Positions 6,087 through 21,945 of a DNA stretch of 64,000 bases are shown here, piece by piece. Both the position numbers and the translations under genes were made by a program. The stretch lies in IMG/VR virus record IMGVR_UViG_3300024239_000011, positions 479,036 through 543,035 of that record; one strand, given 5' to 3'. The notes below the pieces were generated by a model. That model ran no database searches, was not told where the DNA came from, and worked only from the letters and a program-made list of their open reading frames with translations. Positions within the stretch are counted from its first letter, which is position 1; the number at the start of each line of letters is the position of its first letter.

Positions 6087-6697
6087 AGCTTGCGCCCGCT
6101 GAAATAATGCGTCAAGTGGCTCTTGCAATACGGCAAGATTGCCTTGATGCGGATATTATGGGTGCCTTCCGACGCCAGTTTCAATTCAATGGTTGAATTG
6201 TTTTCCACGATCACTTTACGGATAGAAGAGTCGTGTCCATTAATTTCCATGGTTGACGGGTCGGTTTCGCTAAAGCGAGGACGCATATTTTTTACTGACA
6301 ATTCACTGACATCGGAAACCAATTTCTTTTGATCGTCAACCACCGCAACTTTGAATTTGAGAACGTTTGTGTGGCTGTAGTAGCTTTCGCTGGCTTCATC
6401 ATAAAACGTACCATCCTCGGGAATCAGTGATATCCCCTCATATCGAATTGCGTTGTTCCCTTCATCAAGGAACGCGAACATTGACCAATTCGAGCAAACC
6501 ACCTTCAGTGACTTGTACAAATCTTTGTGAATGCGTCCGAGCAGTTTCACCTTCAGCCGAGGGTCTGGAAAATTAATGTTCTCAATCGGAAGTAGAAACC
6601 CAAAGAGCATGGTTATCCGGTTTCTCTCGGTTGGGTCGTATACCACCCAATAGAAACTGTCAGGGTTGTATTTCGGGTTGGAGGTGAATTCAACCAT
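6083..6697 (-). CDS. Hypothetical protein coupled to the U32 gene
   Basis: 204 aa; start overlaps the end of the upstream ORF. Confidence 0.7.
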   Translation of the reverse strand: MVEFTSNPKYNPDSFYWVVYDPTERNRITMLFGFLLPIENINFPDPRLKVKLLGRIHKDLYKSLKVVCSNWSMFAFLDEGNNAIRYEGISLIPEDGTFYDEASESYYSHTNVLKFKVAVVDDQKKLVSDVSELSVKNMRPRFSETDPSTMEINGHDSSIRKVIVENNSTIELKLASEGTHNIRIKAILPYCKSHLTHYFSGRKL

Positions 6698-7703: not shown

Positions 7704-7711
7704 AATTGCCT

Positions 7712-10063
7712 TTACTGTTGTATACCTTGGATGTCACCTTTGTTCGTCGTCACAACACCGGTCGAATCAATCCATGTGATCTTATTCAGTCCTGATATTG
7801 CCGCCCCTGGCGCTCCACCAATGGCACCATTGACTACATTGTTACCACCGAATAACGTTGGCTGCAATTTTTGAACAGATACACTTAGTCCATTACCGCC
7901 TGATATTGAAAAGTCTTGTGTAATATCAGGAAGATCAATGACGCGATATTCTAGCCACATTCCGCGATTACCAGAGACAGTATACGTTTTATAGAACCCA
8001 AAACTGTTAAGCGGGTTGTTTGATCCGTTCAATTCTTGAACAAGATTACTGATTGTCGTCAGTATGTCATGAGTGTCGATATGTACTTCGTTGACCCCAG
8101 GTACCGATTCGACAAACGTATAGGTGACATTATTCACGGTGATGGTTTGACCATTTGTTATTGTTGCCGGGAACAGTACGAGATAAGATTCGTAAAGAAA
8201 ACGACAGCCGCTTCCCGTGCCCGGTTCAACAATAAATGTATTTCCGATATCACTCACGGTTTTATGCTCGATGAATAACCCTTGCGTGCTTTCTTGATTT
8301 CCATTTTTTGTATACATAATAGTTGGGGCATTTTGTACCGTATAGGATGCAGTGTTAATATTCGCGTGTAGGGTCATGCGTAAATTTTCCAATGTGTCCG
8401 CAATTGATGTGCCAATGGCAATTTGCGAACCGAATGTAAAGGGTGTTCCCCCGACCCGGATAGTAGACCCCAAGGTTGGCTGGTCATACATGACCACATA
8501 GCCACGTGCCGGTTCCGCCGGTAGCGGTTGGGATGCACCACCGGAAACATTGGTGTCACCTCCATAGCCGCCTGCTCGCCCAAGTGCCCTTGCGGTACCA
8601 CCAGCACCACCCGTAACGATATTCCCCGATTGACCATTATTACCATGGCGTTCGTTAGTGCGTTCCACCAGACGATTTTCAGTTTTGCTGAATTTGGAAC
8701 TCACCGTGCCACCAATACCAGCATTGAAATCTGATCCGCCAGCACCACCGCCGCCGCCACTACCACCGACGTAAATTTTCATGAGGTTTACGTCATCCCA
8801 AATGATATTGGATGGCGCACCACCACCACCACCGCCGGTTCCAAAAATATGACCTTCGATGTTGCAGATGGAAATTGGATACGATAGCATCATGGATACA
8901 CCACCGGTCTTACCAGGGGCACCAATTTGCGGTGTGCGCGGGATATCATCGGTAGTGATATCACCACCATCACCACCCGCCCCACCGGCTCCAACAATAT
9001 AGCCTTTGTTAATGAGTTTAACCGTGGTAGCGGTATTCGTGAAATTACCAAGCATGAAAGCCGGTACGCTTTCGTCCATGCTACTGATCAATACCGACCG
9101 CCCAACACGTACCGTAATATTCAGCGGTTGCGTTGCTTCATTCCACAAAGGGTATTTTGTTAGAATGTAGTTTTTCAAACTGAAATTGTATGTGTTGCTA
9201 TCAAGGTTGATCGTGATATTGCTTGGTACGGTCGAATCAGGGACCGCCGCAGGCGGTATATAAACGTTGTTGCCTGTCTGAAAACCTTTGATCTTGAACA
9301 GGTTACAGAACCATCGAATGCCCACGGTTGCAGTTGAACTGTCTGAATGCAGCACCGCCTTAAGGACGAATTTACCGTACTTTGCGGTTCCTTCCTCACC
9401 GTCAGCCCAATAGGGGCTGAACGTCGTAAAGCCTGCTGGAATACCATAGTTGTTGTATGGTATGTAGAAATCATACTTGTAGAGAACTGAAAATCCTTTG
9501 AATGCGTAGTTGGCGCGCTCAGTTCCATCCAGTCCTGAGAATAGGAATGGGTCAATAATTGCTTCAAACACTACGGGGGCAGTGGAACCGTAACCACTAC
9601 TGTATGTTTGCTGACCGGTGTTTACTTTACCATTTGCGACGTATGAATTGCCACCGAACGCAGGTAATGTATCAGTCAATTTACCACGTATTACGTCAAA
9701 TCCCAGGACGGTTGATCCATTAATCGTTTGAACCCCAGGGGTATCATTGTTGATGTATTGCAACTCGATTGCACCAGTCACATTTCGTTGTATCTTGTTC
9801 AATACTTGTGACATTGCTTCAATCGTCGGGTTACTGCTCGTACCAGTGTTTGTAGTTGTACCGGTTACAAGGTCACGGTCGGTGACCAAGTTGGTCCACG
9901 TGTCTCGTATGTATGCTTCGATCCGATTATTCGAATAGCGCACCATTCCGTTGATCGAATCCGCCGGTAGCGGGCGTTGAACTGTTGTTCCCTCGGGAAT
10001 ACCTAAGTGGCTGGTATCGGTCTGGGCTATGTTACCCTTTTGTATGGACTTACCTACGCGCAT
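7712..10063 (-). CDS. Tail fibre/receptor-binding-like protein with a Gly-rich segment
   Basis: 783 aa. N-terminal GTTxxRP...G.VRY..E.Y..W module; GxGGxGG repeats typical of phage fibres. Confidence 0.7.
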   Translation of the reverse strand: MRVGKSIQKGNIAQTDTSHLGIPEGTTVQRPLPADSINGMVRYSNNRIEAYIRDTWTNLVTDRDLVTGTTTNTGTSSNPTIEAMSQVLNKIQRNVTGAIELQYINNDTPGVQTINGSTVLGFDVIRGKLTDTLPAFGGNSYVANGKVNTGQQTYSSGYGSTAPVVFEAIIDPFLFSGLDGTERANYAFKGFSVLYKYDFYIPYNNYGIPAGFTTFSPYWADGEEGTAKYGKFVLKAVLHSDSSTATVGIRWFCNLFKIKGFQTGNNVYIPPAAVPDSTVPSNITINLDSNTYNFSLKNYILTKYPLWNEATQPLNITVRVGRSVLISSMDESVPAFMLGNFTNTATTVKLINKGYIVGAGGAGGDGGDITTDDIPRTPQIGAPGKTGGVSMMLSYPISICNIEGHIFGTGGGGGGAPSNIIWDDVNLMKIYVGGSGGGGGAGGSDFNAGIGGTVSSKFSKTENRLVERTNERHGNNGQSGNIVTGGAGGTARALGRAGGYGGDTNVSGGASQPLPAEPARGYVVMYDQPTLGSTIRVGGTPFTFGSQIAIGTSIADTLENLRMTLHANINTASYTVQNAPTIMYTKNGNQESTQGLFIEHKTVSDIGNTFIVEPGTGSGCRFLYESYLVLFPATITNGQTITVNNVTYTFVESVPGVNEVHIDTHDILTTISNLVQELNGSNNPLNSFGFYKTYTVSGNRGMWLEYRVIDLPDITQDFSISGGNGLSVSVQKLQPTLFGGNNVVNGAIGGAPGAAISGLNKITWIDSTGVVTTNKGDIQGIQQ

Positions 10064-10073
10064 ATACCCACCT

Positions 10074-10874
10074 TTAGAATTGATCGAAATTGCGGAATTT
10101 ATAAAGCATTACCATCCAGCGAACGCCAATTTGGGTGTAGTCATTGCTGTTGAAGAAACTTTGTAGTCGCATAGTAAGACGGAACTTTCCGTAATCCTGG
10201 GAGGCAGTGTCGGTTGTTATTGGCAGCATCGTAGTTGAGTTGTGCCAATATTTGTTACCGCTGTTCATGCCATCCATGATTTCGAACAAACAACTGAATG
10301 CATCGTATTTGTAGTTTCCACGATTTGACTGATCAAAACCAACCAACGCCGCAATATCGATTATGAAACGCGCTTCAAACCAACCATTTTGTACCGAATT
10401 CGACCCAGCGTTGGGAATATTTCCCACGATGAAGTTTGATTCCGCGTCGTATAGTCCGATGGTAATATTGTCAGATGACGGGTTTTCTACGGTAATCCAT
10501 GATGGTTGAATAGTTGGTTGTCCTACCCCATAACTGTACCCAATCGTAGGATATTTACCAACCCCAAGTACCACACTTCCGGTTCGTGTTTCATTCAGGC
10601 GTTTGAGAATTTCCGAAATAACCCCACGGGTCAGATTACTCGAAGTATCTGTCGTGTCGGGCGTATACCCTTCTGGGGTTAAGTCTTTAGTTGTGATCAA
10701 GTTGACCCAATGACCATTAATGTAGGCTTCATAGCGACTACTATTATTGTTGAAGCGAACTTCACCACCCCCTGCATTTGCCGGTTGTTCAGAAGTTCTC
10801 CCACGTGGAAACTGGTAGTAGTTTTTCGCAGTAACAGACACATCAGTTGTGAAATCAATCTTTCCCGTGCGCAT
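10074..10874 (-). CDS. Tail-fibre-associated structural protein (paralog)
   Basis: Shares the N-terminal module and the YGKF...IGVRW...YKFRNF C-terminal domain with neighbours. Confidence 0.65.
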   Translation of the reverse strand: MRTGKIDFTTDVSVTAKNYYQFPRGRTSEQPANAGGGEVRFNNNSSRYEAYINGHWVNLITTKDLTPEGYTPDTTDTSSNLTRGVISEILKRLNETRTGSVVLGVGKYPTIGYSYGVGQPTIQPSWITVENPSSDNITIGLYDAESNFIVGNIPNAGSNSVQNGWFEARFIIDIAALVGFDQSNRGNYKYDAFSCLFEIMDGMNSGNKYWHNSTTMLPITTDTASQDYGKFRLTMRLQSFFNSNDYTQIGVRWMVMLYKFRNFDQF

Positions 10875-12244
10875 CAGAAATTCCTATACTTGGTTAGCTG
10901 CCCAACCCACGAAATACCAACCGCATTTGCATAGTATCCAGCAGCACCGTATAATCCGATGTGGACGTTGAAGATGCCATAGTTGGTATCGTTAACACTG
11001 GTCCATGCAGGGGTCATATTAACGGTATAGCGAAGAGGAACGCCCGCATATCCCGAGTTGCCTGACGCGGTGTAATACCAGTCGAAAATTTTGGTCAAAC
11101 CCGTGAAGATGTTGATTTTATAGTCTTTGACCTTGGATGCAGGGACACCACAGGCTTTGAATATATCAAACTGAAAATCCAGCGAGAAACTGGTGCCGTG
11201 AACTGACGCATAGAAATAGGTTTCGAGACGAACATACGATCCGTTTTTCGGAAGCGTTATATAGGCATCGGTAGTATACCCGGCACCTTTATCGACAACC
11301 GAGAATGCTTTGATGGCGCCATTATCTACGATAGGCTGAAATACTGCTGGGGTTGTATGGGTACCGTGAATGGTAATTGGACCGAGATTGGAGGCATATC
11401 CGGCGCCGGAATCGATCACGCGCACAGCAAGTATTTTACCGTTACCCAGCGTGACAGAGATCGCCCCGCCGGTTCCTGAAGTATCTTCGATGACGACGGT
11501 TGGGTTGGTATAATCGCGCCCGCGCGTAATCATTCGCGCTCCCGTGATCACACCATTGGTGACATCAAGCGCCATTTCCGCGCCATATCCAGTTGGATCG
11601 GTAATGCGGGCAGTCGGTTCGGTGTATCCATGACCGCCAGCAGTTACCGTAACAGTGTCAATCAACCCATCACCGAGAATCGGTACCGCGTATGCACGCA
11701 TGTAGTTTAGGTTTTCATTGACGAATGGATTGAGAGTAATCCCGCCGGTACTCGTACCGGAGTACGTGAAACCCTCATTAGCCGCACTACCATTGACGAT
11801 GTACAGAGGCATTGCACTGTTCGAGTCGTCTGGCATGTAGTCTTCTACCGATGGTGGGAAGAAACTTCCACCGGTTCCGGTATGGCTGGTGTTGTGCCAA
11901 ATATCGAACGACCCCACCGACATCTTGAAGAAGTCGGAGATCATCCCGGCCAACATTTCCACGGTCATGTTGGCGTTTGGGTCCACAAATTCCAGATCAC
12001 TGCTATTAGTGACCAGATCGAGCAACGATACCAGCGGGGTCCATTCTCCATCCTGATACACTTCAAGAGCGCCAGTTGAACCACCACCAACGTTGATGTC
12101 GGTGTTATAGCGGATTTGCCCAGAAGTGGGGCTACGATCACCAACTACAGTGCTTTCACGGTCATCGGTAGACCCGGATGGCATCGCAATAAAGCCATGT
12201 CCATTCACTTCTACGGTTGATGGTTCCAGTCTACCAAATTTCAT
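10874..12244 (-). CDS. Tail-fibre-associated structural protein (paralog with GxGY beta-repeat insert)
   Basis: Start MKFGR at 12244 (ATGA overlap); repeats VTAGGHGYT, RGRDYT, DSGAGY, DKGAGYT. Confidence 0.65.
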   Translation of the reverse strand: MKFGRLEPSTVEVNGHGFIAMPSGSTDDRESTVVGDRSPTSGQIRYNTDINVGGGSTGALEVYQDGEWTPLVSLLDLVTNSSDLEFVDPNANMTVEMLAGMISDFFKMSVGSFDIWHNTSHTGTGGSFFPPSVEDYMPDDSNSAMPLYIVNGSAANEGFTYSGTSTGGITLNPFVNENLNYMRAYAVPILGDGLIDTVTVTAGGHGYTEPTARITDPTGYGAEMALDVTNGVITGARMITRGRDYTNPTVVIEDTSGTGGAISVTLGNGKILAVRVIDSGAGYASNLGPITIHGTHTTPAVFQPIVDNGAIKAFSVVDKGAGYTTDAYITLPKNGSYVRLETYFYASVHGTSFSLDFQFDIFKACGVPASKVKDYKINIFTGLTKIFDWYYTASGNSGYAGVPLRYTVNMTPAWTSVNDTNYGIFNVHIGLYGAAGYYANAVGISWVGQLTKYRNF

Positions 12245-12984
12245 CGGGTCACCTTTATGCACCACATATTAGTTGGATTATCAACATGTCCCGGTCCCGT
12301 TAAAGGCAATGTGCCATTAACGAGGAAAGATGACACGTCGAGATATAGTCGATTGGTATTATACAAATATATTTCATCAGGAATTACCATGCGTCCCTGA
12401 TTGTCGTAAACTAATGCCATGACAACGCGCTTATTCAATCCATGATCAATTGGAATTAAGCGCGACCCAGCCGTAATACCCATTGCCAGCATAGTGGCAT
12501 CCAATAGAATTTGCCCACCAACCGGATTGTTCAATACTACGGTAACGATGTTGCTGTGGTCAAAAAAAACGTCATTTGTTTGGGCATCTGGGGGTCCAAC
12601 AAGTTCCCAATGTGGTGTAGGTTGAAATGTCCACGCATAAAGCTTACGCCGGTCAGTATCCCAAAATAATTGCCCTTCAATAAGACCATTGGGTAGGGTA
12701 TTCCCAACTTGTACGCCGGTAGCAATAACCCAATGCGTTCCGTCGTACACATACAACTTGAAATCAGTTGTATTGAACCAGATTTGCCCAGTTAACGGAT
12801 TGCCTTCAGGTGCGGTCGGATTGGCAAAATTTTCAAGTAAGTGAACAAGGTTTTCTGCCCAAATTTCACCATAGTTGACGAAATTACGCCCAAGTAGTTT
12901 CAATGAAGTGTGGGTGGAATCAACAACACCATCTTCGAGGGTAACTACGGCTTCACCGTTGTATTTGTTAATCAAATAGGACAT
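12241..12984 (-). CDS. Baseplate/tail structural protein
   Basis: SLKLLGRNFVNYGEIWAENLVHLLENFA...GQIWFNT...LYVYDG..W, typical of large myovirus tail proteins; late box 13000-13005. Confidence 0.7.
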   Translation of the reverse strand: MSYLINKYNGEAVVTLEDGVVDSTHTSLKLLGRNFVNYGEIWAENLVHLLENFANPTAPEGNPLTGQIWFNTTDFKLYVYDGTHWVIATGVQVGNTLPNGLIEGQLFWDTDRRKLYAWTFQPTPHWELVGPPDAQTNDVFFDHSNIVTVVLNNPVGGQILLDATMLAMGITAGSRLIPIDHGLNKRVVMALVYDNQGRMVIPDEIYLYNTNRLYLDVSSFLVNGTLPLTGPGHVDNPTNMWCIKVTR

Positions 12985-13002
12985 TATTCACCATCCACGT
13001 AT

Positions 13003-14073
13003 TTATCGGCTAATTTTTACACACCATTTATTCGTGCTGTTGTCCGGAAGACTTGGCCCGTTATTTGGCAGTATCCCAGAAAACAAGAAAGACGACACAT
13101 CAATCAATGCGACTGTGGTAGAATACAAATACACTTCGTCGGGAATGACCATCTTCCCCTGGTTGTCGAATACCTGAACAATGTTGTAGCGGTTATCGAG
13201 GTCATGGAAGACACGAAGCAATTTCATCCCTGGCTCAATACCCATAGACATCATGGTAGAATCGATCTGTATTTGTCCTGCCCCTGCCGTACCAGTTACT
13301 ACGGTTAGGAAGTTGGTGTGGTCGAACAATTCCGTATGAGTATTTGCCCCGGTTAATGGCACCCACCCTTTTTTGGCATTGAAATATTCAGGGCAGTCAT
13401 AATCAGTATTGAAACGAAAATCACCGGGTACCGCTACACCTGGGCGATCTACTGTCGTACTGGAAGGTAGCTTTAAGCTTCCCTTTCGATCCATGATGAA
13501 ACGGGCATTGGTATCTGAATAGAAGTCGTCCAGTTTGAAAATATCATCGGTGATTTTTAGTCGTTCAACGGCATTTACAACTACACGGAATCGGGGATTT
13601 CCTGCCGACGTACCGTGCTGGGTAAATTCCGTCTTGGTTTGATTGACATATTGGTAGGTATTTCCATTGATTCCGACCGAATAATCGTCGTCGGTCACGA
13701 TCAGACGATCACGATTGTCCACGATTACGTGGAACCGCGAGTTCCCAGGTGAAGTGCCATACTTGCGAAAAATTGTGCGCGTCTCGGTGATATTCAAATG
13801 GGTATTCCCATTGATATCAAGGTTGAGATCGCCCCCGGACGGAAGTTGTCCATCAATCCGGGTCTGTGTAACGATTACTTTATCTGTACCAGCCACCGAG
13901 AGCTTAAGCGAACCTGTCGTGGGGGCGATATTCAGCCGGGCATACGTATCGGCAGCAACAAGGTAATCCTTGGTGTCGTCGGTGGTGATCTTGAAACGAA
14001 CGTTATCACTCCCGGTGAAATGAGGGATGTTCGTAACAAGGATTTGGTTTTTGTCTTTTATGACACCAGTCAT
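13003..14073 (-). CDS. Tail structural protein; C-terminal domain paralogous to 12241-12984
   Basis: FDHTN...DNQGKMVIPDEVYLY...DVSSFL...WCVKISR versus FDHSN...DNQGRMVIPDEIYLY...DVSSFL...WCIKVTR. Confidence 0.7.
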   Translation of the reverse strand: MTGVIKDKNQILVTNIPHFTGSDNVRFKITTDDTKDYLVAADTYARLNIAPTTGSLKLSVAGTDKVIVTQTRIDGQLPSGGDLNLDINGNTHLNITETRTIFRKYGTSPGNSRFHVIVDNRDRLIVTDDDYSVGINGNTYQYVNQTKTEFTQHGTSAGNPRFRVVVNAVERLKITDDIFKLDDFYSDTNARFIMDRKGSLKLPSSTTVDRPGVAVPGDFRFNTDYDCPEYFNAKKGWVPLTGANTHTELFDHTNFLTVVTGTAGAGQIQIDSTMMSMGIEPGMKLLRVFHDLDNRYNIVQVFDNQGKMVIPDEVYLYSTTVALIDVSSFLFSGILPNNGPSLPDNSTNKWCVKISR

Positions 14074-14084
14074 GTATTCACCAC

Positions 14085-15881
14085 TTAACAGAAGTTGTGC
14101 CGGATAAAGCCGTAAAGGTATTTACCGTCGCAATGAAACTCGATAACGTCGGTTGCGTTCGGTACAGTAGTCAGACGTGGTTTCCCGCCGGGGAACTTAA
14201 TCATGTCTGCAAATTTGATGTCGTGACCACCAACATCGTCTTGATGGATGAAGAGGACATAGGTGTGACCCGCCACGCACCCATCCACCGACAGTTCGAT
14301 AGGTTTGTCCAAGAAAAGGGTCATGGTCCGCGAGCGATTCATCAACCAAACCGTTTTTGCATCACACGGAAGTTCACCATGTGAGACGGTCATTACTTCG
14401 TTCCAGCCGGTTACCTCGCAGACTTCAAAGCTGGTCGTCTCTTCGTTGTAGCGAATCAGCCCGGTTTCATGCTCGCCTCGGTCATAGGTTCGGCCACATG
14501 GAACTTTCAAACCGCGCCGCCCACCAACACGTAGATTGGACGCCAGAGAAATGACCGGATTACCAAGGGCACCGTCTCCATTTACTATGTCGATTTGATC
14601 TGGTTGACCAACCAGGGTACGACCAACCAGATTATCACCCACCTTGATCATCACCCCACCGAGGACACCCGTAACCTTATCAACTACGGCACCGTCTTGC
14701 TTCAGGTCGCGCCCATCAATCACTCCACCATCTGGGAATACGATACTGCCACGGATGTACAGATCGCCTTTGATTGCATCACCCGTTTTGGTAATGAAAC
14801 GGTCGTCCGCCTCTGACTTGGTGTAGTGGTTCGGAAGCTGGGTCTGAATGATTGCGTTCGACAAACCCTTGACCACGCCAGAACCGCGCACGTCGCCCTG
14901 GAAGGTTAGTTTGAAATCGGAGGCACCGATCTCTGGGTTCCCATCGAAACCGTCTCCATGGCGTACCGTAATACCACTGACACCCTTAATTTCACGCGGG
15001 GCAGTCTCGGTACCGGGACGACGTTGAACCACGAAGCCTGCGGCGTTGCCCAAGGTGGAACGCAAATATCGAGTATCATTGTAATCGCGGTCGCCAATAT
15101 GAGTACCATAGATGGGTTCCTTGACGCCCTTCAGGTAATTACCATTGAGATCAAGGGTTCCCATCATCTTCCCACCGGTCGTGGAAAGCACTTCATTGGT
15201 GTCAAGACGGAGGTTCAGAACTATGTCCTCAAGGTTTTTAACCTTCACCGAGCCTTTGACATCGCCCCGCACCACCAGATTGAAGCCCTTAATACCCACG
15301 GTCGGCGGACCCTGTACACCGTCATGATTTAGGACGCGCAAGCCATCAATGGCTTCAAGATGACGCCCAGTGAATACGCCATCTGCTTGCCGCACCAGAA
15401 TACCACTTTTGGTATTTATGCGGTCTAGCAGCAGTCCATCCTTGGTTAAATCACGACCAGCAACCGTGAAACCGTCATCAACATGAATGTTGGCGTTCTT
15501 CATGACCAGATCACCTGTCATGGTATCGCCGGTTTGGTTGACGTAGGTGTTTGAGCCATCTTCGACTGAAACAATACGTCCTTTTATATCCACTGTGATT
15601 TTAGCTGCATCGTATGTACCGGCAACAACACCGGTTTCTGTCAGGCACAACTTGATTTTGAGGGGGTCGCTGCCTTCAGCAATGTATGAGGAAACGCCAA
15701 CAACATCACCCTCTACCTTGATGAACTTGTTCTGGATGCGACTAATTTCATCTGCCGCCTGTCCTAGATTATCTGCGATAGAGGCAAAGTTGTCCCGAAA
15801 ACCCTGTGTTGAATTTGCCTGCTTGGCCTTCGGAAAGTCTTTGTCAATGCCGGTAATGTCTATTTTTGACCCAAATGCCAT
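14085..15881 (-). CDS. Tail fibre-like structural protein
   Basis: SQGFRDNF-like N-terminus, repeated KTGDTMTGDL-type and NGDGxxGNP motifs; late box 15907-15912. Confidence 0.7.
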   Translation of the reverse strand: MAFGSKIDITGIDKDFPKAKQANSTQGFRDNFASIADNLGQAADEISRIQNKFIKVEGDVVGVSSYIAEGSDPLKIKLCLTETGVVAGTYDAAKITVDIKGRIVSVEDGSNTYVNQTGDTMTGDLVMKNANIHVDDGFTVAGRDLTKDGLLLDRINTKSGILVRQADGVFTGRHLEAIDGLRVLNHDGVQGPPTVGIKGFNLVVRGDVKGSVKVKNLEDIVLNLRLDTNEVLSTTGGKMMGTLDLNGNYLKGVKEPIYGTHIGDRDYNDTRYLRSTLGNAAGFVVQRRPGTETAPREIKGVSGITVRHGDGFDGNPEIGASDFKLTFQGDVRGSGVVKGLSNAIIQTQLPNHYTKSEADDRFITKTGDAIKGDLYIRGSIVFPDGGVIDGRDLKQDGAVVDKVTGVLGGVMIKVGDNLVGRTLVGQPDQIDIVNGDGALGNPVISLASNLRVGGRRGLKVPCGRTYDRGEHETGLIRYNEETTSFEVCEVTGWNEVMTVSHGELPCDAKTVWLMNRSRTMTLFLDKPIELSVDGCVAGHTYVLFIHQDDVGGHDIKFADMIKFPGGKPRLTTVPNATDVIEFHCDGKYLYGFIRHNFC

Positions 15882-15936: not shown

Positions 15937-15941
15937 CTGGC

Positions 15942-16460
15942 ATGAAGATGATCGAGCTATTCGAGTATACAGTTGATGGTTTCGTGATCCAAAATAGCGC
16001 GAGCATGATCACACCGGCTGGTGAAGTCATACCGTGTGATTTCGCTGGGCACAGTGATACCGTGGTACATTGGATGGAAGTTAATGATCCAGACACTCTA
16101 GCACAGTGGATCAACGATGGGATTGTTGGCTGGACTGCCGTTAATGGGCACAAAACTGTAAGTGATGAGCAAAAAGTGATGGAAGCAGCCATTCTACATG
16201 GGTGGGTACGGTATTACTTTAGCGGCAAGGTCAATGATTGGGACGAATTTATTCTTCGTTATGTCAGAAATGCTCGTTATCTGGTAGGTTTTACATGTTC
16301 CCCCTCCCACCTCAATGGGAATACTGCTACTGCTTGCTTTCGATTATTAACAAATTTGCAGAAGATGCAGCCGATTGCAGTGGAATTGGGCGGATATACA
16401 GAGTCGTCATATTCGGTGGTACCGTACCGGAAGGCGGTGGAATTCTTCCGATCAATATGA
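15942..16460 (+). CDS. Putative capsid-packaged protein (MKMIELFE N-terminus)
   Basis: Late box directly upstream; Alt-like N-terminus; distant paralog of 55365-55820. Confidence 0.6.
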   Translation: MKMIELFEYTVDGFVIQNSASMITPAGEVIPCDFAGHSDTVVHWMEVNDPDTLAQWINDGIVGWTAVNGHKTVSDEQKVMEAAILHGWVRYYFSGKVNDWDEFILRYVRNARYLVGFTCSPSHLNGNTATACFRLLTNLQKMQPIAVELGGYTESSYSVVPYRKAVEFFRSI

Positions 16461-16472
16461 CTTTTATGCGGT

Positions 16473-16480
16473 TATAAATA
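16473..16480 (+). promoter_or_regulatory. T4-late consensus promoter TATAAATA
   Basis: Exact match upstream of the ORF at 16527. Confidence 0.7.
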
Positions 16481-16526
16481 CCTCCACACACAGGGAGTAA
16501 TTCCACACACATCACCGGAGGTAATT

Positions 16527-17531
16527 ATGACGGATAACCCGTTTTCGATTCGTTTTTCCTGTCTTGAACTTGCTCTAAAGTCGTCCATCGACCCAGAGAA
16601 TGTGCTTCTCACCGCCACCAAATACTACAATTTCGTCAATGGTGATTTTACTTCCATTCCTGAATTGTCAGACAAAGTGAAGTTAGTTCAGCGCGAAAAC
16701 TCTCCCAACCTTTCCAAGGTGTCGGTCCAAATCCGTGACACTGGTTACGAAACCACAGTGCTTGAGCGTATTCGCAAGGCACCGGAGCGCAAGATTTTTG
16801 CCATCGATTTGGAAGACAAGTCTCCTGAAGACATTGTTGAAGCTCTTGAGGAATACAAATCCAAGTTCGAAACGTTGATTGAACTCAAGGCCATGAAGAA
16901 GCTTGCTGGTGTTAGCGAAGACATCGACCTAGATGCGCTCTCGCCAACAGATGATAGTCCAACCCTTTGTGAGTTTAATCGTGCAGAAGTTCTCGAAATG
17001 AAGAACCTACGCAACCTTGTTGCCGATGAGTCAACGGCGGAAAATGAAGAACTTGCCAACGCGATCACCAAACTGAAAGCGTCGATCAATTACAAACCGA
17101 AATTTGGTGGTAAGATCACCAATCCCATCGAAACTTTGTTCCGCGCTGCTGATACCAAGATCGCTGAAGTAGCAGAAGATGGCGAAAGCATCAATGCCAC
17201 CCTACAGTACGCAGTGGATAAAGCGATCAATGAAGCTGCTCGTGTATTGATCGTGGCTAAGGTAGATCAAATCATGGTGCCAATGTCGGTTATTCTAGCA
17301 CTAGATCACGCAGCATTGGGTACCAAGAGCATCAATCCGGATAATGGCATGGCAATGTTCTCGTTCTTGTCAGGTGGGTATGTGGAGATTCGTGAAAGCG
17401 TTGATCCGGAAACTGAAAATCTTGCACCGTATGATTATTTGGTTATGCGGGGGACGATGGGTAGTCAGTCACCGAAAGATTATAATGGGCGTACCATATA
17501 TTTGGTACGGGATGCTTCTCCACGAGCATAA
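16527..17531 (+). CDS. Hypothetical late protein
   Basis: 334 aa, RBS GGAGG, own late promoter and terminator. Confidence 0.75.
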   Translation: MTDNPFSIRFSCLELALKSSIDPENVLLTATKYYNFVNGDFTSIPELSDKVKLVQRENSPNLSKVSVQIRDTGYETTVLERIRKAPERKIFAIDLEDKSPEDIVEALEEYKSKFETLIELKAMKKLAGVSEDIDLDALSPTDDSPTLCEFNRAEVLEMKNLRNLVADESTAENEELANAITKLKASINYKPKFGGKITNPIETLFRAADTKIAEVAEDGESINATLQYAVDKAINEAARVLIVAKVDQIMVPMSVILALDHAALGTKSINPDNGMAMFSFLSGGYVEIRESVDPETENLAPYDYLVMRGTMGSQSPKDYNGRTIYLVRDASPRA

Positions 17532-17537: not shown

Positions 17538-17568
17538 GGGGCGGGAGAACTCTCGCCCCTTCTTCTTT
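17538..17568 (+). terminator. Rho-independent terminator
   Basis: GGGGCGGGAG/CTCTCGCCCC stem followed by a T-rich tract. Confidence 0.65.
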
Positions 17569-17603
17569 CCGCTAAATACCCTGGAATCAAACCAGGGGGC
17601 AGC

Positions 17604-18497
17604 ATGGCTTTGCAAAATATTGTTGGGGAGTTGAACCCCTATATCGAAAATGGTGTGCAAATCGAAGAAACGTTTGGTAAGTACAAAACAAAATTACTTC
17701 GTTCCGATAATGACCATTTTACGTTTGATTTTTATCCATCATTTGATGAATTATCAGTATATTACGATCAGGTTTACCCGAATACTGGGGGTCGCCCATT
17801 CTGGTATAATGCCGATAACAATTATGCAGATGAACGATGGGTTGGGGTGGTTCCAGCAATTGAACAATGGATTGAACACCACTTCGGTCGCCGCGATATC
17901 ACGATCCATGAGGTTGGGTGCGGTTTTGGTGGGCTTGTCGCCAAGCTTCGATCTTTAGGACTGGATGCTTCCGGTACCGATCTCAACACAAAAGCTATCA
18001 GCGATGGACGCACCCGGAAGGGTAATCAACACATCCATGGTCGAAGTGTATATGAGTTCCTTGCGGAGTATGGCAGTCAGGATATGATCTTGATGCAACA
18101 TTTCCTTGAGCATGTGACTGATCCAGTAGAAATTCTCAAAAATATGAAGGATCATATCAATCCCGGTGGATTGATATTCGGGCGCGTTCCAAATAGCCAA
18201 TTCTACCTAGCGAAACATCGCACTATTCGCTCGCACTGGTATGGATACCCACACCATCTACATTATTTTTCCGCAGCGTCCATTGAGAAAATCCTGACTC
18301 ATTGTGGATATACGGTATTGATGGTTGGCGCGACCGACGCGGAAATGTTTGGTGATCGTCAATGGAAGAAATTCGATGAAATCGAAGAGGTTGCTCGTGA
18401 ACGCGGAGACTGGAATGGGTCATGGGATGATTTGGTAAACCTGCTCATTACGCGAAATGAAGCGAAAGAAGTTCAATTTGTAGCGCGAGTGGACTAA
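17604..18497 (+). CDS. Class I SAM-dependent methyltransferase
   Basis: IHEVGCGFG motif I, HFLEHVTDP, PGGLIFGRVPN; late box 17573-17578. Confidence 0.85.
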   Translation: MALQNIVGELNPYIENGVQIEETFGKYKTKLLRSDNDHFTFDFYPSFDELSVYYDQVYPNTGGRPFWYNADNNYADERWVGVVPAIEQWIEHHFGRRDITIHEVGCGFGGLVAKLRSLGLDASGTDLNTKAISDGRTRKGNQHIHGRSVYEFLAEYGSQDMILMQHFLEHVTDPVEILKNMKDHINPGGLIFGRVPNSQFYLAKHRTIRSHWYGYPHHLHYFSAASIEKILTHCGYTVLMVGATDAEMFGDRQWKKFDEIEEVARERGDWNGSWDDLVNLLITRNEAKEVQFVARVD

Positions 18498-19261
18498 TGC
18501 CAAAAGGATTAATTCAGCCTAAAGACTATGGCGACATCATTGCCTTGCAAGGTATTGCCAATTTTCACGGGGTAACGGCTTGGCCGGTATGTCCTCATGT
18601 AATTGAAGTCTTCCGGCACTTCCCCGATATCGAACCAATCCTATTAGATGGATGTACTGATCTGGCACAACATTACTATCACCAAGCTTATGATGTACTC
18701 GTAAGGCGTGGATTTGATGTGGTTGATACTATGTGGCATGGACGGGCAAATGGGTGGGAACGACAACGTACCGTGGAAGGTCTTAAGAGGTGGCCGCAGC
18801 AAGTTCGCGAGACGCTGTTCGTAGACGAACTCAAGTACCTGATGGCGGAAGTACCGATTGAAGAGAAACATCGGGGTTTCCGGTGGAAGCGTTTCCCAGA
18901 CAAAGAAAATACTTTGCTTGACCATGCTCGACAAATAGCGGGTGGGTCGCGGTATGTAGTGGTTCATCAATATGATAACGATTACAAAAGCGTAATGGCA
19001 GAACCTATTCGTTTGGTAACTGATCTACCCGTTGTCAAGGTCGAAGCCATTCCGGGTTTTACGGTACTGGACTGGTATGCGGTGTTTTGTGAGGCAACTG
19101 AAATCCATATGATTGATAGTGCCCCGGCAAACTTCGTTGAATGTGCTGGTATTGGCGAGGTAAAGCATCTCCACCTCTATGCGCGAAAGAACACACGTCT
19201 ACAACCGAAACAAAAATGGGGGTTCGCGTTCCGGGATGATTGGACAAAGCATTATGCATAG
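18497..19261 (+). CDS. Putative glycosyltransferase-like protein
   Basis: YGDII N-terminal motif and IHMIDSAPANF resemble GT-B fold halves; operonic position. Confidence 0.45.
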   Translation: MPKGLIQPKDYGDIIALQGIANFHGVTAWPVCPHVIEVFRHFPDIEPILLDGCTDLAQHYYHQAYDVLVRRGFDVVDTMWHGRANGWERQRTVEGLKRWPQQVRETLFVDELKYLMAEVPIEEKHRGFRWKRFPDKENTLLDHARQIAGGSRYVVVHQYDNDYKSVMAEPIRLVTDLPVVKVEAIPGFTVLDWYAVFCEATEIHMIDSAPANFVECAGIGEVKHLHLYARKNTRLQPKQKWGFAFRDDWTKHYA

Positions 19262-19272
19262 TGAGGTTGGTC

Positions 19273-20175
19273 ATGGTTGATATTTTGGTACCTGCCGGTA
19301 TTGGTGACATCTATTGGGTGATGATCAAAATGCAGTCGTTCATAGAAAAACGACTTGGTGGCGAAATCCCAACAATTTACACCTGCGAAGTAGACCCGAA
19401 GAAAAGCAATCGCAGTCAGGAATTCATGGAGCGCATTCCTTTTGTGAAATATGGCGGTGGTTTTTTTACCAAATCTGCGATTGGTACTAATAGTTGGTTT
19501 GGGACTGATTGGCTCATTCCTGATTATGAGCATAATGGTCGTAAATTTGATTACCTTTTTTGTCTAAATGGAGTGGTTCGAAACGGTTTCGATCTTGAAC
19601 GAGAGTGCGGGCTTGATGCATTCGAGACTAACTGGTATTTCCCTATCAACCCAGCGCCCGAGGAAGACGTTGCCGCCCTCCAATATCGTTCCGAATTGGG
19701 GAATTATGTGGTTGGATTTTTCTCAGGTGATGGAATGTTTAGTCGATGGGTCGCGGAAATGAACCATCACGCCATCTATGACCATCTGACCAAAATACAT
19801 GAACGGACTGGCTTTAAAATTGTCCTTACCGGGAAAGATTGGGATTGGGACACAGGCGTTAACCAGAAAATACTTGCTCTGGATGCAAACAAAGGCATTC
19901 TCGTCAACAAACTCGGACAGACTACGGTTAACCAATTATTTGCTTTGATGAAAAATTCAAAGGGAATTTTTGGCTGGCATGGTGGTAATACCATGATGGG
20001 CGTCGTTTTCAAAGTCCCTACATTTATGATATGGAGCAAATATTTCAAAAATTCAAAGTTCTACGAGAACTGCTTACCGCCCGACAAAAATGGGTGGTAT
20101 GATTTTGATGTAGCAAGTAATTGGGTATCTGGAAACTATGTAGACCGCTTTCTCAAGTTGGGCACCCATGATTAA
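19273..20175 (+). CDS. GT9 (heptosyltransferase-like) glycosyltransferase
   Basis: GIGDIYW, IVLTG, NKLGQTTVNQLFALMKNSKGIFGWHGG pattern. Confidence 0.7.
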   Translation: MVDILVPAGIGDIYWVMIKMQSFIEKRLGGEIPTIYTCEVDPKKSNRSQEFMERIPFVKYGGGFFTKSAIGTNSWFGTDWLIPDYEHNGRKFDYLFCLNGVVRNGFDLERECGLDAFETNWYFPINPAPEEDVAALQYRSELGNYVVGFFSGDGMFSRWVAEMNHHAIYDHLTKIHERTGFKIVLTGKDWDWDTGVNQKILALDANKGILVNKLGQTTVNQLFALMKNSKGIFGWHGGNTMMGVVFKVPTFMIWSKYFKNSKFYENCLPPDKNGWYDFDVASNWVSGNYVDRFLKLGTHD

Positions 20176-21175
20176 GAGAATTACTTTTTTGGGCGATTTT
20201 CTTCGAACCAATCCGGGTGAAACTGTCAATAGTAGCGGTTTCAATGTAAGGTGGTTATCGCATTTGTTGCGGTGGCAAATCAACGCTGCATCAAATTTAC
20301 CGCAAACCGTGTTTATTCCAGATCAAAATAAATTCGAAGAAATATATAATCAAATTGGTTTAATACCATGTTTCGAAAACTGGGTGTCGTCGTTTGATCG
20401 ACCGCTTAATGGAGATATCCTACTACCATTTGTAGAAAATGATTTGGTAATCGGGTTTGAATTATCACCAACAATCAAGCGGATGCTTGATCATATTGAG
20501 GTACCATATATTAATATTCAACTACATCCCATCCGATATTTCGAAGACCTTATGTTCTCGTTTGAGAGTAATAACCCGGATATCGAGGATAGTATTCATC
20601 AATTTTCGGTGACGACAGATGTAGTGGATTTCCAAACCAATATTTTTCAGGCACACCTAGCCCAAAATGCGCTGCCATATTTTGACGAACCCGTGGTTGT
20701 TGTAATGGGTCAAACGTTTTGTGATAAAGCACTTATCGTGCAAAACCGATTGGTAAATTTCAATGATTTTGCGGAACCATTAATAAAGCTCATCAAAACC
20801 CAAAAAGTGGTTTTCAAACCTCATCCACATGCGAATGACCAATGCCCCCTTGGGTCTTGGATGCGTGAAAATGAAGTGCAGATTGTTGATGCGAATGCTT
20901 ACACGTTGATGGTATCACCATTAGTAAGCAAATTCATCACTATGAGTTCTGGATCGGTTTCCGAAGCTATATACTTGGGGAAAACTGGGCAATTTTTAGT
21001 GCATAATCCACTGGATTATCACAAGAATGCGGTAATGCATCAATTTTTCACCGTGAATTTTTGGTCCACTATATTATCACCCGTTATTCCCACCCGAAAT
21101 GGGGTAGCTGAAATGCCATTTGTGTCTGATCGGTGCAGACGTAGTTTGACCACATCATGGGCTTATAGACGTTAA
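20168..21175 (+). CDS. Capsule-synthesis (KpsC/KpsS-like) GT-B protein
   Basis: VVMGQ...D, VVFKPHP, FITMSSGSVSEAIYLGK. Confidence 0.5.
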   Translation: MIKRITFLGDFLRTNPGETVNSSGFNVRWLSHLLRWQINAASNLPQTVFIPDQNKFEEIYNQIGLIPCFENWVSSFDRPLNGDILLPFVENDLVIGFELSPTIKRMLDHIEVPYINIQLHPIRYFEDLMFSFESNNPDIEDSIHQFSVTTDVVDFQTNIFQAHLAQNALPYFDEPVVVVMGQTFCDKALIVQNRLVNFNDFAEPLIKLIKTQKVVFKPHPHANDQCPLGSWMRENEVQIVDANAYTLMVSPLVSKFITMSSGSVSEAIYLGKTGQFLVHNPLDYHKNAVMHQFFTVNFWSTILSPVIPTRNGVAEMPFVSDRCRRSLTTSWAYRR

Positions 21176-21176
21176 A

Positions 21177-21818
21177 ATGGAGAGTGATATGATTAAGCGT
21201 GGATCAATGTTTGTTCTTGATGATGACAACTTTTTTGGTGGATTATTTGATCGTTCCGGCGATCAATTTGAAACTGGTAACCTCAAAGCCGCATTGAAAT
21301 ATGTCCGGATATGGGGGACTGCTATAGATGGTGGTGCCCATTACGGTAGTTGGACCCGTTACCTTACCGATTTCGCGAAGATCATTGCATTCGAGCCGCG
21401 TCAAGACATCCATGAGTGTCTGGTACGCAACACTGAGCATATTCCTCATGTGGATTGCCGCCGCCAAGCTCTTGGTGATCGAATGGATTCCGTCTCGGTA
21501 GGAATCGGCAAGCATTATGATAATTCCGGATGTGGTACCGTGCTGGGTAATGGTGACACCCCAATGATCACCATCGACAGCCTGGGGCTTGACGACGTAG
21601 GATTTATTAAACTTGACGTTGAAGGAATGGAATATCACACCCTCAAAGGAGCAGAAGAAACTCTTAAAAGATGCAAGCCAGTTGTGTTATTCGAAGATAA
21701 AGGTCATAGTGAAGATTATGGGGTTACCAAAGGTGAGTGTGGGAAATTTCTGCAAAGTCTGGGCGCATCTGAACTTTTGGTGATGAGCAAACGAGACTTC
21801 ATTTATGGATGGCGTTGA
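21177..21818 (+). CDS. FkbM-family methyltransferase
   Basis: IDGGAHYG, IAFEP, ITIDSL, IKLDVEGME...GAEETLKRCKPVVLFE. Confidence 0.9.
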   Translation: MESDMIKRGSMFVLDDDNFFGGLFDRSGDQFETGNLKAALKYVRIWGTAIDGGAHYGSWTRYLTDFAKIIAFEPRQDIHECLVRNTEHIPHVDCRRQALGDRMDSVSVGIGKHYDNSGCGTVLGNGDTPMITIDSLGLDDVGFIKLDVEGMEYHTLKGAEETLKRCKPVVLFEDKGHSEDYGVTKGECGKFLQSLGASELLVMSKRDFIYGWR

Positions 21819-21945
21819 TACTTGACGATCATTTTTGTCTATCGTATATATCGAACCACTATCTCATCATTACCCCCAAATGGGATGGTATGTGTCCCGC
21901 TAGTGGTTCGTTGCTGGCGGGACACAGTTTAACAAAGGACACCCA

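What the first reader, a model, noticed from the sequence alone, without database searches (positions are those of the whole stretch)
17573..21818. Late-promoter five-gene glycan operon beside the tail-fibre block
Seen: SAM methyltransferase, GT-like, GT9-like, KpsC/S-like and FkbM genes are tightly coupled, downstream of a terminator and a TAAATA box. Known: these families build and O-methylate LPS/capsule sugars. Inference: late timing fits virion or fibre glycosylation better than DNA modification or early host-surface conversion. Virion glycosylation is little characterised in tailed phages.
Basis: partly seen in the sequence, partly recalled or inferred. Interest (0 to 1): 0.62.

Follow-up and report, generated by a model that had tools for sequence, protein, structure and literature searches.

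The report
Late glycan-building operon in huge phage
A 543-kb uncultured phage carries, next to its tail-fibre genes and behind a T4-type late promoter, five soluble enzymes (three sugar transferases, one a Kdo transferase of the newly defined GT140 family, and two methyltransferases) that most likely build a small methylated sugar chain on a virion protein, though the acceptor was not shown.

Summary
Window 17604-21818 (+) carries five translationally coupled genes behind a real terminator (17538-17559) and a CTAAATAC box (17572-17579).

Gene identities:
- g1 is a class I SAM methyltransferase and g5 an FkbM methyltransferase, both above Pfam cut-offs.
- g2 and g3 are GT-B glycosyltransferases whose models match GT9 heptosyltransferases best (Z 12.8 and 19.5). 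Neither reaches the Pfam GT9 model.
- g4 is not KpsC/S by sequence. It is a full-length homologue of KrkA (PDB 9yfx, E 3.5e-33), the founding GT140 retaining beta-Kdo transferase, and keeps every catalytic and CMP-binding residue.

Timing: [A/C]TAAATA is the most enriched upstream motif in the 543-kb genome. It precedes the sheath, portal, baseplate and fibre genes. The phage also has a gp23-type capsid protein and a gp55-like late sigma factor, so "late promoter" is well supported by inference.

Target: this is not shown. New comparative evidence favours virion glycosylation. g3-like genes, often fused to the g1-type methyltransferase and sometimes next to FkbM or GT140 genes, lie inside capsid-to-tail modules in 12 of 15 distinct viral contig groups examined. 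All five enzymes lack membrane segments, and the phage has no Kdo-activation genes, so it would use host CMP-Kdo. Remodelling of host LPS or capsule remains a live rival.

Verdict: a new variant of a known kind, of moderately high interest.

The parts
17538..17569 (+). Intrinsic terminator ending the upstream 334-aa gene (16527-17531): 9-bp stem with 7 G-C pairs, then TTCTTCTTTC
   Evidence: scan; sequence
17572..17579 (+). CTAAATAC box, a member of the genome-wide [A/C]TAAATA(C) late-type promoter motif, 24 nt before the g1 ATG
   Evidence: the motif precedes sheath, portal, baseplate and fibre genes; gp55-like sigma present
17579..17597 (+). Leader inverted repeat CCCTGG-N7-CCAGGG; its 3' arm overlaps the G-rich ribosome-binding stretch (z -3.1)
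   Evidence: sequence
17604..18497 (+). g1, 297 aa: class I SAM-dependent methyltransferase (Methyltransf_23 core at residues 96-239, motif I VGCGFGG) with a ~95-aa N-terminal extension
   Evidence: (E 3.1e-17); the same domain is fused to g3-like domains in P0014, P0015, L040, L057, L069
18497..19261 (+). g2, 254 aa: compact GT-B glycosyltransferase of a mostly viral family, closest in fold to GT9
   Evidence: no Pfam, PHROG or NCBIfam hit; 146 relatives; model pLDDT 89; VIA Z 12.8 to WaaF 1psw and 3tov, other GT-B about 9; Atlas clusters named GT9, TM 0.8
19273..20175 (+). g3, 300 aa: GT-B glycosyltransferase, GT9-like, N-terminal GxGDIYW motif
   Evidence: model pLDDT 75.7; Foldseek E 4e-9 to 3tov and 1psw; VIA Z 19.5, 17.5, 16.2 to 3tov, WaaF, WaaC and 14.1 to TibC; RfaF E 0.04 only; 42 viral loci
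20168..21175 (+). g4, 335 aa: GT140-family retaining beta-Kdo transferase homologue. Kept residues: general base E98, R123, Q182xxxD186 nucleophile, K217-x-H219-P220, S261, E266, W331
   Evidence: PDB 9yfx/9yfy KrkA E 3.5e-33 over residues 9-334; residue roles from PMC12887879; invariance among five relatives
21177..21818 (+). g5, 213 aa (or 209 aa from ATG 21189, which has the better GGAG ribosome site): FkbM-family methyltransferase
   Evidence: PF05050 E 2.8e-13; TIGR01444 E 2.2e-18; phrog_8156 E 4.9e-21; start choice
21819..21945 (+). Structured 127-nt spacer that closes the operon; 14-15-bp G+C-rich hairpin at 21891-21926 followed by AGUUUAAC
   Evidence: MFE -42.9 kcal/mol, z -3.74, 0 of 200 shuffles as stable
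15942..17531 (+). Two orphan genes (172 aa and 334 aa) just upstream, each with its own late-type box (15930-15937 and 16474-16481). Function unknown; the 334-aa protein is acidic and poorly foldable. Both are candidate co-expressed partners or acceptors
6083..15881 (-). Divergently transcribed tail-fibre and baseplate-like block (context). The 598-aa fibre gene has ATAAATAT at 15907-15913 on the minus strand

Best explanation
This is a late-expressed, cytoplasmic, self-contained glycan tailoring pathway. A T4-type late promoter, read by the phage's gp55-like sigma factor, drives one mRNA for five soluble enzymes.

Two GT9-like GT-B transferases (g2, g3) and a GT140 retaining Kdo transferase (g4) would assemble a short oligosaccharide from host nucleotide sugars. 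CMP-Kdo would come from the host, because the phage has no kdsA or kdsB. ADP-heptose or another NDP-sugar would serve the GT9-like pair.

Two SAM methyltransferases would O-methylate the glycan: g1, which probably works with g3 because the two are fused in relatives, and the FkbM-type g5.

The most likely acceptor is a virion protein made at the same time, such as a tail-fibre protein or a neighbouring late protein, so that progeny particles carry a methylated, Kdo-containing glycan.

Shown: the gene set, the folds, the g4 catalytic residues, the genome-wide behaviour of the promoter motif, and the position of related genes in other phages. Inferred: timing, donor sugars other than Kdo, methylation of sugar rather than protein, and the acceptor.
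For: Operon anatomy.

g4 is GT140 with all key residues.

g2 and g3 are GT9-like folds.

g1 and g5 are methyltransferases.

Functional linkage:
- g1-type domain fused to g3-type domain in P0014, P0015, L040, L057 and L069.
- FkbM, the MTase-g3 fusion and a GT140-like gene are neighbours in L069, L057 and L010.

Late promoter:
- Motif enrichment.
- Motif before sheath, portal, baseplate, fibre and decoration genes.
- gp55-like sigma and gp23-type capsid protein.

Virion link:
- g3-like genes sit between capsid/protease and tape-measure/tail genes in 12 of 15 DNA-distinct viral contig groups.
- g2-like domains lie in large ORFs about 3.5 kb downstream of portal genes in at least 12 loci.
- The operon abuts the fibre block.

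Cytoplasmic, export-independent chemistry:
- No hydrophobic segment in any of the five proteins.
- No GT2 gene was found in the genome and no paralogue of the five genes; no priming transferase, flippase or exporter gene is seen among the operon's five genes and their neighbours.
- A protein-modifying GT9-like precedent, TibC, is among the structural matches.
Against: No glycan, acceptor or transcript has been observed, and only DNA runs from one subsurface study hold the sequence.

Kdo transferases and GT9 enzymes are classically LPS and capsule enzymes, so the host envelope is a natural alternative acceptor.

Three of the 15 related contexts are not structural: L062 (DNA polymerase), L074 (RNR) and L075 (GT/MTase island). 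In small phage genomes, closeness to structural genes is partly expected by chance.

g2 and g3 do not reach the Pfam GT9 model, so the donor sugar is unknown.

The g1-g3 complex prediction gave no verdict.

The methyltransferases could act on protein or on another substrate.
Confidence: 0.5

Rival explanations
1. Host-envelope remodelling. The enzymes act at the cytoplasmic face of the inner membrane on lipid-linked LPS core, O-antigen or capsule intermediates. They would add heptose-like sugars, a beta-Kdo cap and methyl groups, which are all known chain-terminating marks. The effect would be to mask receptors, so that progeny are not lost on debris or superinfection is blocked.
For: g4's characterised relatives act on capsule or O-antigen (KrkA on the K13 capsule; WbbB and KpsC, from PMC12887879). 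GT9 structural matches are LPS-core heptosyltransferases. The phage relies on host CMP-Kdo. Cyanomyovirus LPS/Kdo gene sets are usually read this way (PMC12801897). The low-GC cassette looks horizontally acquired.
Against: The promoter is late-type rather than early. None of the five proteins has a membrane segment. No priming transferase, flippase or exporter gene is seen in or beside the operon. Related genes sit inside capsid-to-tail modules rather than in moron or early regions.
Confidence: 0.25
2. Glycosylation and methylation of a non-virion target: a host protein, or a phage non-structural protein made late.
For: The enzymes are soluble. TibC-like protein heptosyltransferases are a precedent. 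The two orphan late genes next door (15942-17531) have unknown roles.
Against: No candidate target has been identified. The structural-module context of relatives points to virion parts.
Confidence: 0.12
3. DNA hypermodification: the transferases decorate hydroxymethylated bases of phage DNA, as in T-even phages and other phages with glycan-modified DNA.
For: Phage glycosyltransferases often act on DNA (review statements in PMC12619734). The genome has a thymidylate-synthase-family gene that could in principle be a hydroxymethylase.
Against: The promoter is late-type, whereas DNA modification must act during replication. GT140 enzymes use CMP-Kdo on sugar acceptors. Relatives are embedded in capsid-to-tail modules. 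The PF00303 match is very strong (E 2e-119), which fits an ordinary ThyA.
Confidence: 0.04
4. Synthesis of a free or lipid-linked small glycoconjugate (a metabolite) unrelated to virion or envelope.
For: FkbM and Methyltransf_23 enzymes also occur in natural-product pathways (family knowledge). The structural matches include antibiotic GT-B enzymes at lower Z.
Against: No aglycone or scaffold biosynthesis genes are nearby. The genomic context in relatives is structural.
Confidence: 0.04

Closest known systems
KrkA N-terminal module, GT140 (E. coli K13 capsule retaining beta-Kdo transferase; PDB 9yfx, 9yfy, 9yfz; PMC12887879)
   Same: Full-length alignment at E 3.5e-33. The general-base Glu, Arg127 equivalent, QxxxD nucleophile, HP motif, Ser pair, Glu276 equivalent and C-terminal Trp are all conserved.
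   Different: g4 is a stand-alone 335-aa protein with no ribosyltransferase/HAD fusion. It has K-x-H-P, the canonical motif, where KrkA has S-x-H-P, and FE where KrkA has YE. It is phage-encoded under a late promoter. Identity is only about 30%, and the acceptor-binding residues were not compared.
GT9 heptosyltransferases WaaC/WaaF and the protein O-heptosyltransferase TibC
   Same: GT-B fold with GT9 as the best structural match for both g3 (Z 19.5, 17.5, 16.2; TibC 14.1) and g2 (Z 12.8, 11.4; TibC 11.0). Both have the N-terminal GxGD motif.
   Different: Neither reaches the Pfam PF01075 model. g2 has only 254 aa. The donor sugar is unknown. Both belong to mostly viral families that are not detectably related to each other at profile level.
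Mycobacteriophage virion glycosylation (Freeman et al. 2023, cited in PMC12619734 and PMC12801897; the paper itself is not held)
   Same: Phage-encoded glycosyltransferases are expressed with structural genes and decorate capsid and tail-tube subunits. This is the only well-documented case of glycosylated tailed-phage virions.
   Different: The hosts there are actinobacteria and the transferase families differ. Here the chemistry points to Kdo and to GT9-like enzymes of didermic hosts plus two methyltransferases, and no glycan has been observed.
WbbB GT99 / KpsC GT107 retaining beta-Kdo transferases, and terminal methyl or Kdo caps of ABC-transporter-dependent O-antigens
   Same: They share mechanism class and fold with GT140, according to PMC12887879. 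The combination of a Kdo transferase with methyltransferases recalls chain-terminating chemistry (own knowledge).
   Different: There is no sequence similarity: no Pfam Capsule_synth hit. No coiled-coil ruler, kinase or export genes are present.
T4 late transcription (gp55 sigma recognising TATAAATA)
   Same: The [A/C]TAAATA box lies 20-30 nt before start codons of structural genes. The phage has a gp55-family sigma and a gp23-family capsid protein.
   Different: The consensus prefers C or A before TAAATA and C after it. Many leaders carry an inverted repeat that joins the box to the ribosome site. The genome is three times the size of T4. gp33 and gp45 partners were not sought.
Chlorovirus and giant-virus capsid glycosylation enzymes that join transferase and methyltransferase domains (own knowledge, not checked here)
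   Same: Virus-encoded cytoplasmic transferases are coupled to sugar O-methyltransferases, including fusions, and build methylated glycans on structural proteins.
   Different: Those are eukaryotic viruses with different transferase families, and no homology was shown here.

Membership tests
GT140 (KrkA-type retaining Kdo transferase) - g4 | Significant full-length sequence similarity to the KrkA GT140 module | tested here: met
   phmmer E 3.5e-33, query 9-334 against chain 8-350
GT140 - g4 | Nucleophilic Asp in the QxxxD motif (KrkA Q189/D193) | tested here: met
   Q182 and D186 align to Q189 and D193 and are invariant in five relatives
GT140 - g4 | General base Glu in the (Y)E motif (KrkA E102) | tested here: met
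   E98 aligns to E102 and is invariant; the preceding residue is F, not Y
GT140 - g4 | HP CMP-binding motif, Arg127, Ser271/272, Glu276, Trp347 | tested here: met
   H219/P220 (with K217), R123, S261, E266 and W331 are invariant
GT140 - g4 | Transfer of Kdo from CMP-beta-Kdo with retention; trimeric assembly | not testable with these tools
   Needs an enzyme assay or structure
KpsC/KpsS capsule Kdo transferases (Pfam Capsule_synth) - g4 | Match to the family profile | tested here: not met
   No Pfam hit except a sub-threshold polysialyltransferase match, E 0.0095. The KrkA paper reports no sequence similarity between these families
GT9 (Pfam PF01075) - g3 | Match to the family profile above the cut-off | tested here: not met
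   No Pfam hit; no PF01075 match in the genome at E <= 1; RfaF NCBIfam E 0.04, far below the cut-off
GT9 - g3 | GT-B fold with GT9 structures as clear best matches | tested here: met
   VIA Z 19.5 (3tov), 17.5 (1psw), 16.2 (WaaC); the next fold class scores 14.4. Foldseek E 4e-9
GT9 - g2 | GT-B fold with GT9 structures as best matches | tested here: met
   Z 12.8 (1psw, 3tov) against about 9 for other GT-B; model pLDDT 89. No profile hit
GT9 - g2 and g3 | Use of ADP-heptose as donor | not tested
   Donor-binding residues were not compared; an assay is needed
FkbM methyltransferase family - g5 | Match above the curated cut-off | tested here: met
   PF05050 50.8 bits (cut-off 22.7); TIGR01444 67.1 bits (cut-off 37.7)
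Class I SAM methyltransferase - g1 | Profile match and glycine-rich motif I | tested here: met
   Methyltransf_23 63.2 bits (cut-off 27); VGCGFGG at residues 104-110
T4-type late promoter | TATAAATA-like box enriched just upstream of genes, including virion genes | tested here: met
T4-type late promoter | Phage-encoded gp55-family sigma factor | tested here: met
   G000 258620-259495(-): phrog_12791 E 2.6e-82, phrog_234 E 8.6e-19; T4 gp55 phmmer E 1.9e-4
T4-type late promoter | Transcription late in infection starting at the box | not testable with these tools
   No RNA run holds the sequence
Phage virion glycosylation systems | Glycan covalently attached to capsid or tail proteins | not testable with these tools
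   Uncultured phage. Only genomic context is available

The most novel reading that the evidence does not exclude
Virions of phages that infect didermic bacteria are decorated, by phage enzymes that draw on the host's own LPS precursors (CMP-Kdo and possibly ADP-heptose), with a methylated, LPS-core-like glycan. This would be a form of surface mimicry or shielding. The mostly viral GT9-like families found here inside capsid-to-tail modules of many uncultured phages would then mark a widespread, undescribed virion-glycosylation system outside the actinobacteriophages.
Probability: 0.22. Interest if true: 0.8.

Novelty: new variant of a known kind. Interest (0 to 1): 0.6.

Why it matters
Glycosylated virions are documented for mycobacteriophages, but hardly at all for phages of Gram-negative hosts.

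This locus gives a concrete, testable gene set. It contains what appears to be the first phage member of GT140; the only paper in the library that describes the family lists bacterial homologues and names no phage. It also has two mostly viral GT9-like families and two methyltransferases, all under a T4-type late promoter.

The comparative result is that these transferase families habitually sit between capsid and tail genes in many uncultured phages and are often fused to the methyltransferase. This suggests virion glycan decoration may be much more common than is recognised, with consequences for adsorption, stability, immune or defence recognition, and phage engineering.

If the target is instead the host envelope, the locus would be a late-acting receptor-masking system built on Kdo chemistry. 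That would also be new.

Tried and rejected
Searches that found nothing:
- Megablast of the operon, and tblastn of g4 and g3, against 50,697 GenBank phage records: no match.
- g2 gave one weak hit, in Microcystis phage Mel-JY01. No cultured relative is therefore available.
- The search for related loci with g4 alone in viral contigs: nothing.
- The word-based protein search gave few relatives for g4, g2 and g3. The one exhaustive search was therefore spent on g2, which all family scans had left open.
- Pfam searches of the whole genome for KdsB (PF02348), KdsA (PF00793), GT9 (PF01075) and GT2 (PF00535): no match.
- No paralogues of the five genes elsewhere in the genome.

Inconclusive or unhelpful:
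- A thymidylate-synthase-family gene is present, so that test does not exclude DNA modification.
- Profile comparison of g2 with g3 shows no relationship beyond the N-terminal GxGD motif.
- The Atlas search of the 334-aa neighbour gave no usable hit and a poor model.
- PHROGs gave nothing for the 172-aa neighbour or for g6 and g7.
- Complex prediction for g1 with g3: no verdict. It counts neither for nor against binding.
- T4 gp55 found nothing through the genome search. A sensitive phmmer run and then PHROGs identified the late sigma.
- The capsid gene itself has no box within 150 nt of its longest-ORF start. Its true start and promoter were not resolved.

Not available or not used:
- Only four DNA runs, from one subsurface study, hold the sequence, and no RNA run does.
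- The Freeman et al. 2023 paper is not held.

Rejected reading:
- KpsC/KpsS membership for g4. There is no profile match, and a better-defined family fits.

No alternative genetic code was used.

Full report
**Where the window lies.** The window is the last 64 kb (479036-543035) of a 543,035-bp IMG/VR virus record that CheckV rates as complete. The same locus, letter for letter at protein level, occurs in contigs from several other samples. Only DNA runs from one subsurface-metagenome study hold it. The phage has a T4 gp23-family major capsid protein (PF07068, E 4.6e-81), a contractile tail sheath and a T4-like portal, and an isoleucyl-tRNA-synthetase-like gene. It has no close relative among 50,697 GenBank phage records.

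**The observation.**
- A strong intrinsic terminator (17538-17559; 9-bp stem, 7 G-C pairs, T-rich tail) closes an upstream 334-aa gene.
- CTAAATAC follows at 17572-17579, 24 nt before the ATG at 17604.
- Five + strand genes come next with a 1-base overlap, an 11-nt gap, an 8-nt overlap and a 1-nt (or 13-nt) gap.
- The long start of g4 (20168) is the right one. Residues 1-30 carry positions that are invariant among relatives and align to KrkA, although some gene callers chose a later start.
- The operon ends in a 127-nt spacer that folds far better than shuffles (z -3.74), with a 14-15-bp G+C-rich hairpin.
- Two small orphan genes and a tRNA-Thr gene follow.
- There is no further late-type box between 17579 and 22601, so one transcript for five genes is the simplest reading.

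**What the five proteins are.**
- g1 is a class I SAM methyltransferase (Methyltransf_23, E 3.1e-17).
- g5 is an FkbM-family methyltransferase (PF05050 and TIGR01444, both above their cut-offs).
- g4 had only a sub-threshold Pfam hit. Against the PDB sequences it matches one protein, KrkA (9yfx, 9yfy), at E 3.5e-33 over its whole length.
  - KrkA's N-terminal module was described in January 2026 as the founding member of GT140. It is a retaining beta-Kdo transferase that works through a covalent Asp-Kdo adduct (PMC12887879).
  - The residues that paper shows to be essential or donor-binding are all present in g4: general base E102, R127, Q189/D193 of QxxxD, H227/P228, S271/S272, E276 and W347. 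In g4 they are E98, R123, Q182/D186, H219/P220, S261, E266 and W331, and they are invariant across g4 and four relatives.
  - g4 also has the canonical Lys of the (K/R)xHP motif, which KrkA lacks.
- g3 gave no profile hit beyond RfaF at E 0.04. Its AlphaFold model (pLDDT 75.7) is a GT-B fold whose best matches are GT9 enzymes: 3tov Z 19.5, WaaF 17.5, WaaC 16.2, TibC 14.1. The next class, UDP-GlcNAc 2-epimerases, scores 14.4.
- g2 had no hit in Pfam, PHROGs, NCBIfam or PDB sequences and no word-search relatives, so the exhaustive search was used. It found 146 relatives, among them domain fusions with Methyltransf_23, GT2, GT9 and CmcI-type rhamnosyl O-methyltransferase domains. Its model (pLDDT 89) again matches GT9 best (Z 12.8 against about 9 for other GT-B). 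The ESM Atlas places it among viral clusters auto-named GT9.
- None of the five has a hydrophobic segment.

**The 'late promoter'.**
- TAAATAC is over-represented in the window (18 against 5.45 expected).
- In the whole genome, 60 of 111 copies lie within 60 nt upstream of a same-strand ORF start.
- The 7-mers most enriched upstream of genes are TAAATAC, ATAAATA and CTAAATA, about 11-fold each.
- 122 of 720 ORFs have [A/C]TAAATA within 90 nt upstream.
- Of 20 large motif-bearing genes scanned, most have tail or virion-structural hits. These include the tail sheath (E 4.6e-275), a sheath-family/sheath-stabilizer protein, a second sheath-like protein, the portal (E 2.5e-116), three proteins with baseplate-wedge and virion-structural hits, a fibre-like protein, two further virion structural proteins and a head-decoration/fibre protein.
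- The fibre genes beside the operon carry the box too.
- The genome encodes a gp55-family late sigma factor (phrog_12791 E 2.6e-82; phrog_234 E 8.6e-19).

By the T4 paradigm (own knowledge: gp55 recognises TATAAATA), this makes the box a late promoter. That is an inference; no transcripts exist.

**Evidence on the target from related loci.** g3-type genes were found in 42 IMG/VR loci, which fall into 17 DNA-distinct groups.
- The g3 domain is repeatedly fused to a g1-type methyltransferase (P0014, P0015, L040, L057, L069).
- In L069 the fusion sits next to an FkbM gene. In L057/L058 it sits next to a GT140-like gene. In L010-L012 and a Logan contig it sits with FkbM, sulfotransferases and a Maf-like MptE domain. 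The core of this operon is therefore a recurrent module.
- I scanned the neighbours of 15 groups.
  - In the largest group (23 loci, represented by L042), the order is portal, protease, major head protein, four small genes, the g3-like gene, six small genes, tape measure.
  - L037, L040, L069 and L072 have the gene just downstream of the capsid protein.
  - L038, L057, L070 and L076 have it upstream of the tape measure.
  - L036, L059 and L077 have it beside a head protease, a tail protein, or terminase plus portal.
  - Three groups are non-structural: L062 (DNA polymerase), L074 (RNR) and L075 (GT/MTase island).
- g2-type domains occur in 97 viral loci. In at least 12 of them they are part of 700-1350-aa ORFs about 3.5 kb downstream of a portal gene.
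- Small phage genomes are rich in structural genes, and no formal permutation test was run. The argument is suggestive, not proof.

**Mechanism proposed.** A late mRNA yields five soluble enzymes. They use host nucleotide sugars, since neither kdsA nor kdsB is found in the phage, to assemble a short glycan with three glycosidic steps, one of them a beta-Kdo transfer, and two methylations. The glycan would be built on a protein made at the same time, most likely a fibre or another virion protein encoded next door.
- The precedent for a cytoplasmic GT9-like enzyme acting on protein is TibC.
- The precedent for glycosylated phage virions is the mycobacteriophage work cited in PMC12619734 and PMC12801897.
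- The main rival is action on lipid-linked LPS or capsule intermediates of the host. The known biology of Kdo transferases and GT9 enzymes favours this rival. Late timing, the lack of membrane segments, the absence of any priming or export gene in or beside the operon, and the structural context of relatives all weigh against it.
- DNA glycosylation and small-molecule synthesis are unlikely but not excluded.

**Other points.** The operon's G+C content (0.436; g4 0.394) is lower than 99.4% of equal-sized windows of the genome (mean 0.487), so it looks like an acquired cassette. The nearest bacterial GT140 relatives are only 28-31% identical. They lie in Coxiellaceae, Eisenbacteria, Roseomonas-group and Thermodesulfobacteriota genomes, which gives no host or donor call beyond 'didermic bacteria'.

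**Novelty.** Phage glycosyltransferase cassettes and virion glycosylation are known kinds. New here are:
- a GT140 Kdo transferase in a phage;
- its coupling to two mostly viral GT9-like families and two methyltransferases under a T4-type late promoter in a half-megabase phage;
- the finding that these families are habitual residents of capsid-to-tail modules.

I rate it a new variant of a known kind, interest 0.6.

Noticed in passing
G000-wide; examples at G000 457940, 136920, 147337, 229100, 446389; window 17579-17597: Leaders between the late-type box and the start codon are unusually structured. 27% fold with z < -2, against 5% of control leaders (Mann-Whitney p 7e-4). The stems often begin in the ATAC of the box itself and pair with the Shine-Dalgarno stretch (ATACCTC...GAGGTAT).
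   Followed up: partly
G000:C1:258620-259495 (-) and 223087-223884 (+): The phage encodes a gp55-family late sigma factor (phrog_12791, E 2.6e-82) and a second, sigma70-like factor with region 2 (PF04542 E 1.8e-13; phrog_351).
   Followed up: partly
L007 (ENA ERZ27245855 contig k141_178484, 869,618 bp): An 870-kb metagenome contig carries the same locus with identical proteins. The IMG/VR record is 543 kb and rated complete. The cause could be a concatemer or mis-assembly, a larger relative, or an incomplete IMG/VR record.
   Followed up: no
window 22641-22715 (+) and 36408-36484 (+): tRNA-Thr(TGT) lies directly after the two small genes that follow the operon. tRNA-Met(CAT) lies further on.
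   Followed up: no
window 50470-53274 (+); G000:C1:85530-87083 (-): A 934-aa isoleucyl-tRNA-synthetase-like gene (36-38% identical to ileS stretches in phage-collection records, including one annotated isoleucyl-tRNA synthetase). A second, 517-aa IleRS-like ORF elsewhere in the genome sits behind a late-type box.
   Followed up: no
window 15942-16460 and 16527-17531 (+): Two orphan genes, each with its own late-type box. The 334-aa product is acidic (pI 4.7), has no relatives in the Atlas and a very poor predicted structure (pLDDT 0.37). It is followed by the strongest terminator in the region, so it may be an abundant late protein.
   Followed up: partly
L010-L012 (139.6-kb and related contigs), genes 2766-11481: Another phage-like contig holds a larger glycan-tailoring island. 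It contains FkbM, a Maf-like MptE domain, four sulfotransferase genes, a 1023-aa protein (DxD-containing N-terminal region + Methyltransf_23 + g3-like domain), a second g3-like gene and a TnpB element.
   Followed up: partly
window 17604-21818: Operon G+C is 0.436 (g4 0.394) against 0.487 for the genome, lower than 99.4% of 4.2-kb windows. This suggests horizontal acquisition.
   Followed up: yes
window 22717-23340 (-): A 207-aa protein with weak HNH/IscB-like and zinc-ribbon hits (NCBIfam IscB E 2.8e-4), behind a late-type box. Several homing-endonuclease-like genes elsewhere also carry the box (G000 184888-186198 and 370858-372204).
   Followed up: no
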